A DNA stretch of 64,000 nt, from assembly GCF_021869535.1 (NCBI RefSeq), contig NW_026262690.1, positions 103,788,001 through 103,852,000 on the forward strand, given 5' to 3'. Positions 6,394 through 49,789 of this stretch are shown here, piece by piece. Numbering within the stretch: the first letter of the stretch is position 1; each line of letters starts with the position of its first letter. Origin of the DNA: Mytilus californianus. Taxonomy: Eukaryota. The notes beneath the pieces are model-generated. The model did not search any database. It saw only the letters and a program-made list of their open reading frames with translations, and had not been told where the DNA came from. Both the position numbers and the translations under genes were made by a program.

Positions 6394-6445
6394 CGCCCAA
6401 CGTGGGGCTCGAACCCACGACCCTGAGATTAAGAGTCTCATGCTC
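6394..6445 (-). pseudogene. tRNA-Lys(CTT) 3' fragment (52 nt), cut by insertion E1
   Basis: ...GAGTCTCATGCTC is followed by T11 instead of TACCGACTGAGCTAGCCGGGC. Confidence 0.95.
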
Positions 6446-8003
6446 TTTTTTTTTTTATCTTTATTATATTCACACTTTGTATATACATATCACAGATTAC
6501 AATTACAATTACACATACATGAAAACATTGTAAATAATTACTGTCCTTTCTCTGAAATGAATGATATTCTAAGTTTTACAATCTATATATTTACTTATTT
6601 TTTTCCCTAACATAACTCTCTGATAATGAACTTGTGTATACTTAAATCTTCTACTCTTTTTTTTTTTTTTTACTTTTTCTCAATTTTTAAATAAAACAAT
6701 AAAAAAACAACAGTTCAACTATTACAAGGATGAAAGAAACTCAAAATGTGTAAATACGCAAATGATCTATTTTAATTAATGTTCGTTGTTTAAACAAAAA
6801 ACGGTTGGTTTCCAGACCAGAATTTTGATACATCACAAGAATTATTTTAGAATTATTTCACGTATTCAACATGTATTGTCCCCCCCCCCCCCCCCCCGAT
6901 AACAGTTTATTCATCAAAGCACCACAAACAAAGTCTATGTATCTCTGCGTATCTTTCCATCCTTGGAATACCACGAACGTAACAAATAATTTCATCATCG
7001 TCCGATTTTCTAATATCTCTAAATCTGTTGACGTAAGACATTGCGTTTTCATATTCCTTTTTATCAGTTTCTAAATTTATATGACGAGATTCACCACGTT
7101 TCCCTATAGTACACATGACTACCGTGTCTCTCTTTTTTAATTTTCCTATAATACAACTTCCCTCTGATCGTCTGCTAAAAACTATTTTCTGAAAATGACT
7201 ATCTGTACACGGACTCTTCCCTGTAATTATTAATTTCGGAGCGATAGTTTTTATTTTATCTATTTCTCCATTTTCTTTATCCTTAACATCCGTGTGTAAA
7301 TTCCGTTCAGTTCGCGAACCTTGACACACTATACTTTCCGTTATTTCATTGTCCTTATTAATTGTTTTGTCCAGCGATACACTACCCGGCTGAACAACTT
7401 TCACTACAGGTGTAATGTTTACTTGTTTAGGGGCTACTAATGGGAGATCGATCTTTCCATCGTGTAGCATATCATCACCCGAATCCATTACCACTTCTGA
7501 ATTATCGATGTTAATATCAAGTGTCTTATCAACGTCGTCTTCTGTATTGTCTATTCTTTCTTTCAATGTTTTCATCCTTTTATTGTCTCTGTCTCTATTA
7601 GATCTGGACTTATGCTTTATTCCTCTATTGATGTGTATTGAATCACCCCTTGTCCAAACCAATGAAATTCTCATTTTGTCACCAAGGTAATTGGAATTCC
7701 ATGTAAATTGTTCATATTCATCTATGATACTGTTAATTAACGCAACTAAAGGCTTTGGCAATTTTTCCATTATGATTTCCCTTTTAAGTACCTCAACGTT
7801 TCACAGCAAAAAGTAAAGTTACCAAACAACAAATACGCACAGCATAATTCTCAAAAATGTCAGTATTTCAACTTACATTACTGTTAGGTAGTCACATTTA
7901 CTTATCCCGGCTGGTTATATCCAAATCCACAAGAAATAGTAACCCAATAACAAGAGTAGAAAATTACACGTCTATATCCGATTAAGGTGCACTCGACTTT
8001 TCA
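6446..8003 (-). mobile_element. E1: 1.56-kb polyadenylated non-autonomous retroposed element with one ORF, inserted in tRNA-Lys
   Basis: Minus-strand 3' end AATAAAGAT(A)11 abuts tRNA nt 22; array resumes at 8004; no RT/EN, LTR or TIR visible; about 233-nt 5' UTR, 864-nt ORF, about 460-nt 3' UTR. Confidence 0.85.
6907..7770 (-). CDS. 287-aa protein of unknown function carried by E1
   Basis: Intact ATG-to-stop ORF in the same orientation as the A tail. Likely folded N-terminal region (LPKPLVALINSIIDEY...KHKSRSNRDRDNKRM), acidic low-complexity linker, and a C-terminal region of about 100 aa. No CCHC, RT or APE motifs. Confidence 0.7.
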   Translation of the reverse strand: MEKLPKPLVALINSIIDEYEQFTWNSNYLGDKMRISLVWTRGDSIHINRGIKHKSRSNRDRDNKRMKTLKERIDNTEDDVDKTLDINIDNSEVVMDSGDDMLHDGKIDLPLVAPKQVNITPVVKVVQPGSVSLDKTINKDNEITESIVCQGSRTERNLHTDVKDKENGEIDKIKTIAPKLIITGKSPCTDSHFQKIVFSRRSEGSCIIGKLKKRDTVVMCTIGKRGESRHINLETDKKEYENAMSYVNRFRDIRKSDDDEIICYVRGIPRMERYAEIHRLCLWCFDE

Positions 8004-8211
8004 TTTGCACGAACTTCACGGGTGCAGCTGTGATCAATGCATGTCTTTGTGTAAATGACCGCACGAAATCGTGCACTTTTATATAGACCGCCGTTTATGA
8101 AATCTGTGTAATAACTATTAGTTGGTAAATAAAAAAGTAACTAGTTTTCAGTTATCGTGTATGTTTATTATGCCTTTTCCAAATTGCCAAACCGATACAA
8201 TAAAAATTAAC

Positions 8212-8284
8212 CGCCCAACGTGGGGCTCGAACCCACGACCCTGAGATTAAGAGTCTCATGCTCTACCGACTGAGCTAGCCGGGC
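8212..8284 (-). tRNA. tRNA-Lys(CTT), intact copy just upstream of the E1 5' end
   Basis: Identical to the array consensus. Confidence 0.97.
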
Positions 8285-46510: not shown

Positions 46511-49037
46511 ATGATGGATTAAATCTGGTGTTGATAAATCTGGTGTTGATCTGCATGTTGATAAATAAGTGACATAATATTTACATGAGGTATTACTACT
46601 CCATTGTATATATTAAATCAATCGATTTATGAATTTCGAACAGCGGTATATTACTGTTGTCTTTATTTAAATGCATTTATAATTACGAAATGTACATTGC
46701 AAAGTTTCAGCTGATAATACATACAAAAGCTTAAAGGGTACCCTTGACGTATTCCATTGTTTATCTTAAAATATTTTGTTAAAAATAAACCTTACATTTT
46801 ATTGAACTCTGTATATCTGTATAAAATATTTCTATCCACTTAAAGAAAATAATGTCTCTAATGCTAGATATTGTATTGTACTGTCTCTACCCGATACACA
46901 ACAGGTTTGACAAATTGATATAATTCTACTCAAAATTTTTTAAAACGAGTAGCCACACTTTTGCTAAATGTTCATAATCGACTTGGAGTAAAGATATTAG
47001 TCAAATTTTTCAAACACTTTCTTTCACCTTTGTTTGTTCTGATATATCAAACTTATTATACCAAATTTCATTGATCTAGACATACACATATTTTTTTCTA
47101 CAGTTTGGAAAAGCTTTAAAAATACATCTTTTGATATCTGAAAAAATGTACAATAAAGTTCTACTGCCAAACCATCTGATCCTCGACTTTTGTTTTTTGA
47201 CATTTTGTTAAGAGAAAACTCAATCTCTTGTAAAGTAATATCTTCATCACACATAGAATTATCATATTCTGAAATTTTAACATCCACATATTCTGAAATC
47301 TCATTCATGACAGTCTCATCAATTTAAACACATGAGTATAGTTTCTTGAAAAAAAAGTATACTCCACATCCAGAATATATTATGTGTTACAAACAATTTC
47401 ATTGTTATCATTTAATAACTCCTTTATACAATTTGATTCTTCGTTATGTTTCTCAAGTTGTAAAAAAAATGTTTTGTATATTTATCACTTTCAGTAGCCA
47501 AGTATACATTTGAGCTAAGGATTGCTCCTTTACATTTATCCTCTTCCAAAGCACACAATTCCATCTTAAAATTTTCATAATGAGCTAAATCTGTATTTTT
47601 ACCATTTGCTATTAAAGAATTCTTTACTTAGAAATGTTGAGTATATTGACAACATATAAATTATTATAGATTTGCCTCATCTATAATATTTTATATATTG
47701 TCAATATACTCAACATTTCTAAGTAAAGAATTCTTCAATATCCACAAACTTGGTCCTTTTTCCACATTTTCAAAACTAATTTTCATTTCTACAAACCGAT
47801 GACCACTCTGTCAAGAAATCCATATAAACGAGTTTTTTTTCAAACTAAAATATATTGTGTATAAAAACAGTTACTTGTCTATTTACCAAAAAATAATCCA
47901 ACCTCGGCTACTTTAAAACATCATTATGTATCATTTTCCTAGAAAAAAACTCGTTTATATGGATTTCTTAATCTCCAAATTTTATACAAATTTGAATCAT
48001 TCATCAAAAGTTCCAATTTTCTAAATGCATTATCAGCCTGTCTTACTACATATCTCTAAGTCAGACAAAAATAATAAAAACAGCACGCTAGAAATTCCAT
48101 GCGTCCGAAGCGCTTTTCTGTGTTCACCTTCATCAGTAACGCTCAAAGTCGAATATTTGAAAGCCAAGGGTGTATAGGAACCGAAAACAGTTGAAGAGCT
48201 ATATTGTCAACTAAAATAGCAACGCCTTGTTTTCTATTTATACCATTACCATCAAGATTTTACCATTATATAATTTTTTCAATATTGTTAACTAGCCCCA
48301 TATTCCAGAATGTTTCTTGTAATAACAATATGCCTATATTTCTTTCATTAGCAATTGTAAAGTATTGTTTACAATTAACTATGTTTCTCACGCCATTACA
48401 GTTGTGACTCACTATCAGTACCATGGCTAAATATAGTAACAAAAAGTAATATGCAAAAATACCGAACTCCAAGGAAAATTCAAAACGGAAAGTCCTTTAT
48501 CAATTGGCAAAATCAAAAGCTCAAACACATCAAACGAATGGAAAATAACTGTCATATTCCTTACTTGGTACAGGCATTTCCTTATTTAGAAAATGGTGGA
48601 TTAAACCTGGTTTTATAGCTAGCTAAACCTCGCACTTGTATGACAGTCGCATATAATTCCATTATATTGACAACAATTGGTTAGCAAAACAAACAGATAT
48701 AATAGGTAAAAATGTCAAAAAATGGGATACAGCTGTCAGCATTGTGTTATATTCTTAATCACAATAAAAACAAATAACTAACAAAATTGCATAAAGACAC
48801 TCTATAGACAAAGTACATCAGCAAAAATAAAAGACAAGAATACAAAAATGACAAAAGCATAATAACTCGATGGCGGAATGTATAAATACCGAACCACGCC
48901 AAAAGTATATTACCAAAAATGGACTAAACAGTAAAGGTTAAAAACATACAAAGACAAATAAAAAGAACACTATAACACGTAATTAAGATGATAAACAATG
49001 TCAGTACCTAGAATCTATACTTCAAGACCATCATGTA

Positions 49038-49289
49038 TTATTTGTAAAGTCGATACGATACGGAATATTTATTTACAAGTTCTTGGTATCTTCCGATGAA
49101 CTCTTGGAAAAGGTCGAAACGTTCTTTGACACAACCCTGGTTCATCAACTTTATATTTTTTATAAAGTCTGAGTAGCAGCTGCAGGCTCTTGCATACCGA
49201 ATGAGTAGGGTGAATATTTTACTATCAAGTTTTTCATACGGAGAAGATCTGACCTTAACTTTATCAACCTTAGGAAAAAAATGCATCAT
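49038..49289 (-). pseudogene. Fragment of a Penelope-like RT C-terminal region
   Basis: LLIRYARACSCYSDF...LMNQG...FQEFIGRYQELVNKY resembles the post-RT helical region of PLE proteins (recalled, not searched). Confidence 0.5.
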
Positions 49290-49716
49290 ATTTCTTCTCT
49301 TTTTGCCTGATTTTTTTAAATGACTCTGTCTAAATCTTGAACCAGAGACACCAAAATACTCTTACTTTCTCTATCTCTACTGGTTGCACAATCAACGCTA
49401 CCAGCAGAGATGTTGTCTTCTTTGTCAGTGTGCTCATCACCCGACTCAGAGTCAGTTTCCATGCTCTATAAATTTTCACTTTCATTCTTAGTTTATGCTC
49501 ATATTAGGCATCCTTAGCACGAAGTTTTGCACGGGTACGCTGGGATCAAGTCTTTGTACAGGACAGCACAAACTCGTGCTTTTTTTTTTATAAACCGCAG
49601 TTTATAAAATCGATTTATGTACAGTATAAAAAAAACTAGTTTTCAATTAACGTGTATGAGAACTATGTTGTTTTTTCTTCTTCCTTAAAATGCCAAATGA
49701 TACAATAAAAAATAAT

Positions 49717-49789
49717 CGCCCAACGTGGTGCTCGAATCAATTACACTGATATTACGACTGTCATGCTCTACCGACTTGGTTAGATGGGC
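49717..49789 (-). pseudogene. Uninterrupted but degenerate tRNA-Lys(CTT)
   Basis: 73 nt, more than 10 substitutions including the anticodon arm and B-box. Confidence 0.85.

What the first reader, a model, noticed from the sequence alone, without database searches (positions are those of the whole stretch)
6394..49789. Six insertions at one nucleotide of tRNA-Lys(CTT): a tRNA-gene-targeting Tx1 retrotransposon system
Seen: at 6445, 12791, 24060, 24596, 32895 and 39281 the minus-strand tRNA-Lys is cut leaving the same 52-nt 3' part. The cut lies at nt 21/22, the D-loop/D-stem boundary between the A and B boxes (plus or minus 1 nt because of the T run). Each cut is joined to an A tail in the tRNA's orientation. 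None of the 13 tRNA-Arg copies or spacers carries such an insertion. Known: Tx1-clade APE elements include sequence-specific members (Keno in U2 snRNA, Mutsu in 5S rDNA, Dewa in the spacer of tRNA tandem arrays). Inference: several diverged families (E2; E3/E5; E4; E6) share one cleavage site inside the tRNA-Lys coding sequence, implying long-conserved specificity, possibly an undescribed mollusc lineage.
Basis: partly seen in the sequence, partly recalled or inferred. Interest (0 to 1): 0.85.

Follow-up and report, generated by a model that had tools for sequence, protein, structure and literature searches.

The report
LINEs that insert inside tRNA genes
A group of mussel jumping genes (L1/Tx1-type LINEs and a small passenger element) insert at one fixed spot inside tRNA genes of almost every kind, not just tRNA-Lys, and I found no paper describing this way of choosing a target.

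Summary
Six minus-strand tRNA-Lys(CTT) copies are cut so that nt 22-73 remain, each joined to an A-tail in the tRNA's orientation. A seventh lies 5.7 kb before the window. The inserts are independent: E2, E4, E5 and E6 are diverged APE+RT LINEs. E3 is a 451-bp tail about 83% like E5's. E1 is a discrete 1.56-kb non-autonomous element, not a truncated LINE.

The "Lys(CTT)-specific" reading fails. Elsewhere in this 1.65-Gb mussel genome, 34 of 36 distinct 3' junctions of the E1 and E2 families abut a tRNA or tRNA-like head. About 20 isoacceptors are hit, always in sense, mostly at the D-loop/D-stem boundary (nt 21/22). Relatives in a M. edulis assembly, a M. coruscus assembly, a third NCBI assembly and an ENA metagenome contig do the same. 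The clean target duplication is 14-15 bp, with the second nick in the anticodon loop. In this array the 5' junctions lie 24-266 bp past a Lys gene instead.

These proteins belong to the L1 group. Tx1 affinity is only indirectly supported.

I read this as generic, position-precise targeting of tRNA gene bodies. No paper in the searchable library describes it; Repbase and Dfam were not checked. How the site is recognised is open: A-box DNA, TFIIIC, or DNA structure.

The scan has related notes on this genome (s1-318120, s1-330638).

The parts
72..24061 (.). Tandem array of 1135/1132-bp units, each with tRNA-Arg(TCG) on + and tRNA-Lys(CTT) on -, interrupted by E1 and E2. It holds all 39 intact copies of this tRNA-Lys sequence that a pattern scan (up to 2 mismatches) found in the genome; the array starts before the window.
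6394..6445 (-). tRNA-Lys nt 22-73 left after the E1 insertion
6447..8003 (-). E1: a discrete non-autonomous poly(A) retroelement of about 1,555 bp. Eight genomic copies share the same 5' end and are 91-100% identical. Its last ~200 nt are about 77% like the tail of a LINE family.
6907..7770 (-). E1 ORF of 287 aa. It has no Pfam match and is unlike LINE ORF1. It is intact in 7 of 8 copies. Homologues of 283-307 aa at 41-84% identity occur in other Mytilus assemblies.
8004..8264 (-). Second copy of Lys nt 22-73 plus 207 bp of trailer, abutting the E1 5' end (apparent 261-bp duplication). It continues into an intact Lys gene at 8211-8285. It differs from the copy at 6186-6446 by the TTA indel that separates the two unit types.
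12740..12791 (-). tRNA-Lys nt 22-73 left after the E2 insertion (one private substitution)
12793..20478 (-). E2: a full-length LINE. Its 5' end starts GACTTCCGG, as in relatives from other assemblies.
19161..20282 (-). E2 ORF1, 373 aa, with a CCHC zinc knuckle. It is 33-44% identical to ORF1 of related elements.
16334..18952 (-). E2 ORF2, N-terminal 872 aa: APE endonuclease plus reverse transcriptase
14948..16401 (-). Two tandem copies of a 727-bp repeat (94% alike), making up most of the ~1.9 kb that splits E2 ORF2
13174..14552 (-). E2 ORF2, C-terminal part with the zf-RVT domain
20479..20798 (-). Second copy of Lys nt 22-73 plus 266 bp of trailer, abutting the E2 5' end (apparent 320-bp duplication). 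It has four private differences from the copy at 12473-12792.
24009..24060 (-). tRNA-Lys nt 22-73 after E3. It is 100% like the array; a 130-bp deletion of the unit lies next to it at 23973/23976.
24062..24512 (-). E3: a 451-bp 5'-truncated copy, about 83% like the E5 tail. It encodes the last ~88 aa of ORF2.
24545..24596 (-). tRNA-Lys nt 22-73 after E4. The whole sandwiched piece, 24513-24597, is 93% like the unit.
24598..32818 (-). E4: a decayed LINE with ORF2-like APE, RT and C-terminal pieces, frameshifts and internal repeats
32844..32895 (-). tRNA-Lys nt 22-73 after E5. The sandwiched piece, 32819-32895, is 93.5% like the unit.
32896..39066 (-). E5: a decayed, apparently full-length LINE of the P0013/P0015-like family (about 50-60% aa identity in the RT)
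39230..39281 (-). tRNA-Lys nt 22-73 after E6. The sandwiched piece, 39067-39282, is 85% like the unit.
39283..49494 (-). E6: the oldest and most decayed LINE, with ORF2-like pieces at 44701-48439 and nested repeats
49717..49789 (-). Degenerate but full-length tRNA-Lys, followed by about 222 bp of trailer (49495-49716) that abuts the E6 5' end

Best explanation
The six inserts (seven with the one just outside the window) are independent target-primed reverse-transcription events. They come from a clade of mussel L1/Tx1-group LINEs and from a non-autonomous element that shares a LINE-like 3' tail.

Shown: the elements join their poly(A) end to the sense strand of a tRNA gene. This means the template strand was nicked at the D-loop/D-stem boundary, between nt 21 and 22, or 20/21 if A21 belongs to the target. 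It happens in tRNA genes of about 20 isoacceptor types and in tRNA-like repeat heads, always in the tRNA's orientation. The Lys/Arg array is one target among many.

Shown: where both ends are clean, the 5' junction lies at nt 35-37 in the anticodon loop, which gives a 14-15-bp target duplication and splits the gene.

In this array the 5' end is instead joined 24-266 bp past a Lys gene. The result is a 77-320-bp apparent duplication, or equally a deletion of just under one unit. Either way an intact Lys gene is left upstream of each insert.

Inferred: recognition is generic because it reads what all tRNA genes share next to the cut. I favour direct reading of the A-box/D-arm DNA by the ORF2 endonuclease, as in Tx1L and R1, with the nick falling at the T-A step that ends the D loop. 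My odds for this are about even against tethering to TFIIIC.
For: Six identical junctions in the window and their different inserts. Genome searches with the last 300 nt of E2 and E1 gave 36 distinct junctions outside this array, and 34 of them abut a tRNA or tRNA-like 3' part; the two exceptions are L046 and L047. A cut-site table against intact paralogues shows the junction follows A21 (A21A22 in Leu and Ser) whatever the D-loop length, 4-7 nt after G18G19. The flanks carry gene trailers with T-runs and array spacers, and no CCA. Clean 14-15-bp duplications occur in Asp (L008), Thr (L022) and M. coruscus Val-AAC (L083), and a 5' junction at nt 36/37 in L068. Other assemblies show the same site: L067 Asn, L069 Phe, L076 M. 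edulis His. ORF2 has APE, RT and zf-RVT domains, and ORF1 has a CCHC knuckle. The best solved relative is human L1 ORF2p at E 5e-83. The endonuclease scores 10 bits higher against the L1 EN chimera that carries the Tx1L hairpin loop than against native L1 EN. The known tRNA-targeters span a 39-member subclade (99% SH-aLRT) inside a 50-protein clade (100% SH-aLRT; quick tree without bootstrap) that sits apart from mammalian L1.
Against: The recognition step is not shown by any result here. The cut follows the end of the D loop, not a fixed distance from G18G19, which is awkward for a rigid A-box reader. tRNA-His is cut at nt 9/10 in two independent events (L042, L076). Asn, Leu-CAG and Thr-AGT have junctions 3-5 nt upstream, Gly-CCC 3 nt downstream and one Tyr copy 10 nt downstream. 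tRNA-Arg(TCG), with a similar D arm, is hit 0 times against 7 for Lys in the same array. Two related copies lie outside tRNA genes (L074, L082). For those I have only co-location with the same tRNA clusters.
Confidence: 0.8

Rival explanations
1. Same insertion chemistry, but the site is chosen by tethering. ORF1p or ORF2p binds the Pol III factor TFIIIC (or Pol III itself) on the gene, and the endonuclease then nicks its preferred T-A step in the few exposed base pairs just after the A box.
For: The targeting is generic for all tRNA types and for tRNA-like heads with A and B boxes. The orientation is strictly sense. The apparent junction scatters from about 5 nt upstream to 3 nt downstream of the main site, with rarer farther outliers. 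Dictyostelium TRE5-A and yeast Ty3 choose tRNA genes this way (PMC5006619, PMC3706591).
Against: Known tethered elements land outside the gene and less precisely (PMC3706591, PMC5006619). Here most junctions fall on one phosphodiester bond. The Arg genes of the same array, presumably equally bound by TFIIIC, are not hit.
Confidence: 0.35
2. Structure-specific nicking. During transcription the template strand folds into a cloverleaf-like shape, and the endonuclease cuts at the 3' end of a D-stem strand, where the helix ends.
For: The cut tracks the D-loop/D-stem boundary rather than a distance in nucleotides. In class II tRNAs with a 3-bp D stem it shifts by one. The odd His site (nt 9/10) is also the 3' end of a D-stem strand on the template strand.
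Against: A 3-4-bp DNA stem is very weak. No data here show such folding. The A21 rule can equally be explained by annealing of the poly(A) tail to the T opposite A21.
Confidence: 0.1
3. One reading: a Tx1-type lineage whose endonuclease recognises the tRNA-Lys(CTT) sequence itself.
For: All seven junctions in this array are in Lys and none are in Arg.
Against: The same families (98-100% identical tails) sit in about 20 other tRNA species. All intact copies of this Lys sequence that the scan found lie in this one array, yet each of the two families searched returned more than 40 matches genome-wide, a lower bound.
Confidence: 0.03
4. The tRNA pieces are not targets. Either the element carries them (3' transduction, or the reverse transcriptase switching onto tRNA molecules), or one insertion was spread through the array by recombination.
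For: Arrays do amplify insert-bearing units. For example, seven identical Gly-CCC junctions lie 2,488 bp apart (L053-L059).
Against: Each copy has a different tRNA followed by that gene's own trailer and neighbours, with no CCA and no second A-tail. The six inserts in the window are different elements.
Confidence: 0.02

Closest known systems
Tx1L of Xenopus and the sequence-specific Tx1-clade families Keno (U2 snRNA), Mutsu (5S rDNA) and Dewa (spacer of tRNA-Leu arrays) (Kojima & Fujiwara 2004, as cited in PMC3706591)
   Same: L1-group APE+RT LINE with a poly(A) tail. Insertion is precise and orientation-specific in multicopy Pol III/snRNA gene arrays. The endonuclease hairpin loop resembles that of Tx1L.
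   Different: Each of those families has one target sequence. Here a single family uses one structural position in about 20 different tRNA sequences. Dewa sits in a spacer, not in the gene.
Dictyostelium TRE5-A/TRE3 and NLTR elements; yeast Ty3 and Ty1
   Same: Generic for all tRNA genes, and seen as a safe-haven strategy.
   Different: They integrate upstream or downstream of the gene at a distance set by TFIIIB or TFIIIC, never at a fixed position inside it (PMC3706591, PMC5006619). They are known from compact genomes; this is a 1.65-Gb animal genome.
Dada DNA transposons (PMC3706591, PMC8869645)
   Same: They insert inside tRNA genes, many of them in or near the A box.
   Different: They are DDE DNA transposons with 6-7-bp TSDs, and each family is tied to its own tRNA species by primary sequence.
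R1 and R2 of rDNA
   Same: Many families share one site in a tandem multicopy gene, with variable 5' junctions and head-to-tail runs of elements.
   Different: They have a single conserved target sequence. R2 uses a restriction-like endonuclease.

Membership tests
L1 group of non-LTR retrotransposons (L1 + Tx1 clades) | ORF2 with N-terminal APE endonuclease, RT and a C-terminal zinc-binding domain, plus a poly(A) tail | tested here: met
   Pfam Exo_endo_phos, RVT_1 and zf-RVT. A-tails preceded by AATAAA in four of the six elements.
L1 group of non-LTR retrotransposons (L1 + Tx1 clades) | Closest characterised relatives are L1-type ORF2 proteins rather than R2, CR1, RTE or similar | tested here: met
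   Human L1 ORF2p at E 5e-83 over residues 2-878; R2 proteins only at E 1e-14 to 1e-15 over the RT.
Tx1 clade | RT phylogeny groups the element with Tx1L and Repbase Tx1 references, apart from L1 proper | not testable with these tools
   No Tx1 reference sequence was available. The clade is separate from mammalian L1 in my tree. A bivalve survey lists Tx1 among its 11 bivalve LINE clades and no L1 clade proper (PMC10294476).
Tx1 clade | Endonuclease hairpin loop (betaB6-betaB5) of Tx1L type | tested here: inconclusive
   71 bits against the L1 EN chimera with the Tx1L loop, against 61 bits for native L1 EN. The gain comes from the loop segment. This is suggestive only.
Tx1 clade | ORF1 with a CCHC zinc knuckle | tested here: met
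   zf-CCHC in E2 ORF1. This feature is not exclusive to Tx1.
Sequence-specific LINE with a single target sequence (Keno/Mutsu/Dewa/R1 kind) | All or nearly all copies of a family lie at one conserved nucleotide sequence | tested here: not met
   Copies with 98-100% identical tails lie in Lys, Gln, Met, His, Asp and a tRNA-like head. The sequences on both sides of the cut differ.
Pol III-complex-tethered tRNA-gene targeters (TRE5-A, TRE3, Ty3 kind) | Generic for tRNA genes irrespective of isotype | tested here: met
   About 20 isoacceptors plus tRNA-like heads.
Pol III-complex-tethered tRNA-gene targeters (TRE5-A, TRE3, Ty3 kind) | Integration outside the mature coding sequence at a factor-defined distance | tested here: not met
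   The junction is inside the gene at nt 21/22.
Pol III-complex-tethered tRNA-gene targeters (TRE5-A, TRE3, Ty3 kind) | Physical interaction of element proteins with TFIIIB, TFIIIC or Pol III | not testable with these tools
   Needs biochemistry.
Dada DNA transposons | DDE transposase, 6-7-bp TSD, no poly(A) tail | tested here: not met
   The elements have an RT and APE, A-tails, and TSDs of 14-15 bp or longer.

The most novel reading that the evidence does not exclude
A clade of animal LINEs recognises a class of genes rather than a sequence. It nicks the template strand of any tRNA gene at one structural position inside the gene body (the end of the D loop), with a 15-bp stagger into the anticodon loop. 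It has kept this rule across families about 49% identical in ORF2 and across several mussel species. If recognition is intrinsic to the ORF2 endonuclease, this would be a protein that reads the Pol III A-box/D-arm module. If recognition is by tethering, it would be the first tRNA-gene tether seen in an animal, and the first to place the cut inside the gene.
Probability: 0.55. Interest if true: 0.85.

Novelty: new variant of a known kind. Interest (0 to 1): 0.8.

Why it matters
Target-specific LINEs are models for how retroelements find safe sites, and they are starting points for programmable gene insertion. The known ones either read one DNA sequence (R2, R1, Tx1L, Keno) or land near Pol III genes by holding on to transcription factors (TRE5-A, Ty3). 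These mussel elements combine the two behaviours. They cut with single-bond precision, yet they do so in roughly 20 tRNA sequences that share only the promoter and fold features of the D arm.

This makes a concrete question testable with an endonuclease assay: does an APE-type nuclease read the A box, a DNA shape, or a bound factor?

It also bears on tRNA gene evolution in bivalves. Canonical insertions split genes. In arrays an intact copy is usually left upstream, insert-bearing units get amplified, and decayed ends of arrays fill with head-to-tail runs of elements. Annotation pipelines will see many "half tRNAs" that are really insertion scars.

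Tried and rejected
- **Truncated tRNAs in Rfam:** I ran Rfam in E-value mode on 20 loci hoping for truncated tRNA hits with model coordinates. Only full-length tRNAs were reported. I mapped the cuts by matching to intact paralogues instead.
- **E4, E5 and E6 families:** I did not try to obtain those letters another way, so their junctions elsewhere are untabulated. 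Many matches lie in the same tRNA clusters as E1 and E2 copies. The E4 and E6 tails also contain unrelated abundant short repeats.
- **Reads:** E1 is present in DNA runs of the same species and of a second species. The one raw RNA run gave a single read, and the array flank had no depth in contigs. This gives no evidence on expression or on the 5' junction.
- **Protein atlas:** it gave no usable clade name.
- **5' transduction:** I considered it as the source of the long upstream flanks. I rejected it as a general explanation because the upstream flank matches the local target in each locus.
- **Insertion order:** I considered that later elements entered the regenerated upstream Lys. The flank lengths (619, 626, 470, 424) and the identity gradient (100, 93, 93.5, 85%) fit the opposite order, with E6 oldest and E3 youngest.
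- **Discriminating motif:** comparing the D-arm sequences by eye, I found no motif that separates hit from unhit tRNAs (Arg-TCG, Arg-ACG, Trp).

Full report
**1. The observation**

The window begins with a tandem array whose 1135-bp (later 1132-bp) unit carries tRNA-Arg(TCG) on the plus strand and tRNA-Lys(CTT) on the minus strand. There are 13 Arg and 12 intact Lys genes. Scanning for the two halves of the Lys gene finds six extra copies of the 3' part alone, ending at 6445, 12791, 24060, 24596, 32895 and 39281. No orphan 5' part was found.

Read on the minus strand, each junction is "element ... short A-run | G22 of the tRNA". A21 cannot be told from the tail. The inserts between these pieces are E1 6447-8003, E2 12793-20478, E3 24062-24512, E4 24598-32818, E5 32896-39066 and E6 39283-49494. 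They share little or no nucleotide similarity, except that E3 is about 83% like the E5 tail. So these are six separate events at one bond.

A pattern scan of the whole assembly (1.65 Gb, 175 contigs) adds a seventh junction of the same kind 5.7 kb before the window. It also shows that all 39 intact copies of this tRNA-Lys sequence that the scan found lie in this one array.

**2. What the inserts are**

E2 has an ORF1 with a CCHC knuckle. Its ORF2 has an APE endonuclease, a reverse transcriptase and, after a 1.9-kb interruption that includes two tandem 727-bp repeats, a zf-RVT C-terminus. A tblastn with full-length relatives shows the same APE-RT-C-terminus order, with frameshifts, in E4, E5 and E6. 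It also finds the last ~88 residues in E3.

E1 is different. Eight genomic copies, 91-100% identical, all start at the same base. It is therefore a discrete non-autonomous element of about 1,555 bp, not a truncated LINE. It carries a 287-aa ORF that is intact in seven of the eight copies, has no Pfam match and is unrelated to LINE ORF1. The ORF has 283-307-aa homologues at 41-84% identity in M. galloprovincialis, M. coruscus and unnamed samples. E1's last ~200 nt are about 77% like the tail of a LINE family.

**3. The key test: where do other copies sit?**

I searched the genome with the last 300 nt of E2 and of E1 and read the flank after each tail. Apart from the copies in this array there are 36 distinct junctions. 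Of these, 34 abut the 3' part of a tRNA gene or of a tRNA-like head with a B box. The two exceptions are copies of a more distant family.

The tRNAs are Lys-CTT, Asp-GTC, Ile-AAT, Asn-GTT, Gln-CTG and Gln-TTG, Tyr-GTA and Met-CAT (both with introns), Ser-AGA, Leu-CAG, Leu-TAA and Leu-AAG, Thr-AGT and Thr-CGT, Phe-GAA, Val-AAC, Pro, His-GTG, Gly-CCC and Gly-TCC, and Arg-TCT. The tRNA part is always in the element's orientation. The flanks continue into each gene's own trailer, T-run and neighbouring tRNA genes, without CCA. That rules out transduction and template switching onto tRNA molecules.

Copies of E1 that are 98-100% identical sit in Lys, Gln, Met, His and a tRNA-like head. So one and the same active family uses many tRNA species.

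**4. The position of the cut**

I matched each junction to an intact paralogue. The junction falls right after A21, or after A21A22 in class II Leu and Ser with their 3-bp D stem. This holds whether the D loop puts that point 4, 5, 6 or 7 nt after G18G19.

There are exceptions:
- Asn at 19/20, alongside two Asn events at 21/22.
- Leu-CAG three nt early, and one Thr-AGT five nt early.
- Gly-CCC three nt late, Pro one nt late, and one Tyr copy at 31/32.
- tRNA-His at nt 9/10 in two independent events: E1 in this genome, and a full-length LINE in M. edulis.

**5. The other end of the insert**

Where both ends are clean, the 5' junction lies at nt 35-37 in the anticodon loop, which gives a 14-15-bp duplication. 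Examples are Asp (L008) and Thr (L022) once the array period is subtracted, and M. coruscus Val-AAC (L083), whose flank ends at nt ~36 and resumes at nt 22. L068, a Thr gene, shows a 5' junction at nt 36/37. Shorter and longer duplications also occur: 6, 11, 17, 109 and ~350 bp, plus a 6-bp deletion.

In the window none of the junctions is canonical. Each element's 5' end abuts spacer 24-266 bp downstream of a Lys gene, at unit positions 443, 384, 619, 626, 470 and 424. This can be read two ways: as 77-320-bp duplications that recreate an intact Lys gene upstream of each insert, or as deletions of just under one unit (815-1058 bp).

If the 5' joins fell at random in the unit, all of them landing in that 266-bp stretch would be very unlikely: about 2e-4 for the six listed here, lower still if the deletion breakpoint beside E3 is counted. 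That favours a distance-dependent second break.

However, the two copies flanking the very young E1 differ by the TTA indel that separates the two unit types of the array. So either they come from two units or one was converted afterwards. I leave this open. It is the subject of the neighbouring note s1-318120.

The sandwiched Lys pieces are 85% (after E6), 93.5% (after E5), 93% (after E4) and 100% (after E3) identical to the array unit. A decayed but full-length Lys gene sits upstream of E6 at 49717-49789. This points to E6 as the oldest insert and E3 as the youngest.

**6. Other genomes**

ORF2 homologues are abundant in Mytilus coruscus, M. edulis and M. galloprovincialis and in unnamed ENA, JGI and Logan contigs. 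Intact ones are about 1,283-1,300 aa. Contigs around them show the same rule:
- GCA_029782575.1, 70% aa identity to E2: tail | Asn nt 22.
- An ENA contig, 49% aa identity: tail | Phe nt 22, in a Val/Pro tRNA cluster.
- M. edulis: tail | His nt 10, inside a His array.
- M. coruscus, an E1-like element in Val-AAC.

Two copies lie outside tRNA genes. L074 belongs to a sister subclade. L082 is an E1-like element with a 14-bp duplication in non-tRNA DNA. Several Logan contigs begin near the conserved 5' end (GACTTCCGG) and end in poly(A), which looks like transcripts.

A quick maximum-likelihood tree (SH-aLRT only, no bootstrap) puts all relatives of about 40% identity or more in one clade of 50 proteins (100% SH-aLRT), apart from mammalian L1. 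The known tRNA-targeters span a 39-member subclade.

**7. Family**

Against solved structures the best match by far is human L1 ORF2p, at E 5e-83. The endonuclease scores 10 bits higher against the engineered L1 EN that carries the Tx1L hairpin loop than against native L1 EN, and the gain lies in that loop. A survey of bivalve LINEs lists Tx1 among its 11 bivalve LINE clades and no L1 clade proper (PMC10294476). So L1-group membership is shown. Tx1 membership is likely, but it was not tested against references.

**8. What is known**

In the library I could search:
- The known retroelements that target tRNA genes generically (TRE5-A, TRE3, NLTR, DGLT-A, Ty3, Ty1) insert upstream or downstream, not inside the gene (PMC3706591, PMC5006619).
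- The sequence-specific Tx1-clade families each have one target, and Dewa's is the spacer of tRNA-Leu arrays (PMC3706591).
- Dada DNA transposons insert inside tRNA genes, but each family is tied to its own tRNA by primary sequence (PMC3706591, PMC8869645).

I found no description of LINEs inserting at a fixed position inside tRNA genes of many isotypes. Repbase and Dfam entries could not be checked.

**9. Mechanism**

Shown: target-primed insertion, with the template strand nicked at the end of the D loop. It is generic for tRNA genes and sense-oriented, with a canonical 15-bp stagger.

Inferred: how the site is found. I slightly favour direct reading of the A-box/D-arm DNA by the endonuclease, which is the Tx1L and R1 precedent, with the nick at the T-A step that ends the D loop. 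Tethering to TFIIIC is nearly as likely. A structure-specific cut on a folded template strand would explain why the site follows the helix boundary and the odd His site, but it rests on weak stems. The bias of 7 Lys hits to 0 Arg hits in one array, and the His site, are not explained by any of these.

**10. Verdict**

The wider finding is a guild of LINEs, plus a protein-coding passenger element, that hits tRNA gene bodies at one structural position. That is a new variant of a known kind, and it is readily testable.

Noticed in passing
window 6907-7770 (-); loci L037-L044, L082, L083: The non-autonomous element E1 carries a conserved 287-aa ORF with no known domain. It is intact in 7 of 8 copies. 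Homologues of 283-307 aa at 41-84% identity occur in other Mytilus assemblies and unnamed samples. This points to a protein-coding passenger family that shares a LINE-like tail.
   Followed up: partly
L042 (this genome) and L076:7330-7360 and 1440-1475 (M. edulis): tRNA-His is cut at nt 9/10 instead of 21/22 in two independent insertions by different elements, with duplications of 11 and 17 bp. Asp, which shares the same 15-nt D-arm sequence, is cut at 21/22. Unexplained.
   Followed up: partly
window 72-23567: tRNA-Arg(TCG), interleaved with Lys in the same array and with a similar D arm (GGATAA|GGCG), has no insertion in 13 copies, against 7 for Lys. Arg-ACG and Trp partners of other hit arrays (L008, L019) are also intact.
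   Followed up: no
window 5747-8696: The array has two unit types, 1135 bp with TTA at unit position 604-606 and 1132 bp without. The partial unit downstream of E1 is of the 1132 type, while the one upstream is of the 1135 type. This is the reverse of their neighbours on each side.
   Followed up: partly
window 14948-16401 (-): E2's ORF2 is split by about 1.9 kb that includes two tandem 727-bp repeats (94% alike). Their origin was not examined.
   Followed up: no
window 23973-23976: A 130-bp deletion of the array unit (unit positions 485-614) lies directly downstream of the Lys part that follows E3.
   Followed up: no
G000:C110:103776222-103778888 (before the window): The spacing between two intact Lys genes here is 2,666 bp instead of 1,135 bp, so there is another insert of about 1.5 kb. 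It did not match the A-tail|Lys pattern and was not read.
   Followed up: no
L013, L015, L016, L021, L032, L036, L038, L039 (contig C99, 45-72 Mb): A repeated tRNA-like unit with an A-box-like stretch (TAGCAGTGGGGATAA) and a B box is hit at least eight times by the E1 and E2 families. The junction is at the equivalent position and one TSD is 6 bp. It is probably a tRNA-derived repeat or SINE head.
   Followed up: partly
window 20463-20478 (-); L067:3-13, L071:41-51, L073:82-92, L074:57-67: Full-length elements of several families begin with GACTTCCGG, an ETS-site-like motif. It may be an internal promoter element.
   Followed up: no
window about 39371-39448 and 24760-24801: The tails of E6 and E4 contain short sequences (about 75 bp and 42 bp) that occur at 98-100% identity in the dozens of genome matches listed, a lower bound. 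They are probably nested small repeats.
   Followed up: no
L014, L017, L041, L044, L060: tRNA-Tyr(GTA) and elongator tRNA-Met(CAT) genes of this mussel carry introns. ARAGORN mislabels them as Leu(tag) and SeC(tca).
   Followed up: no
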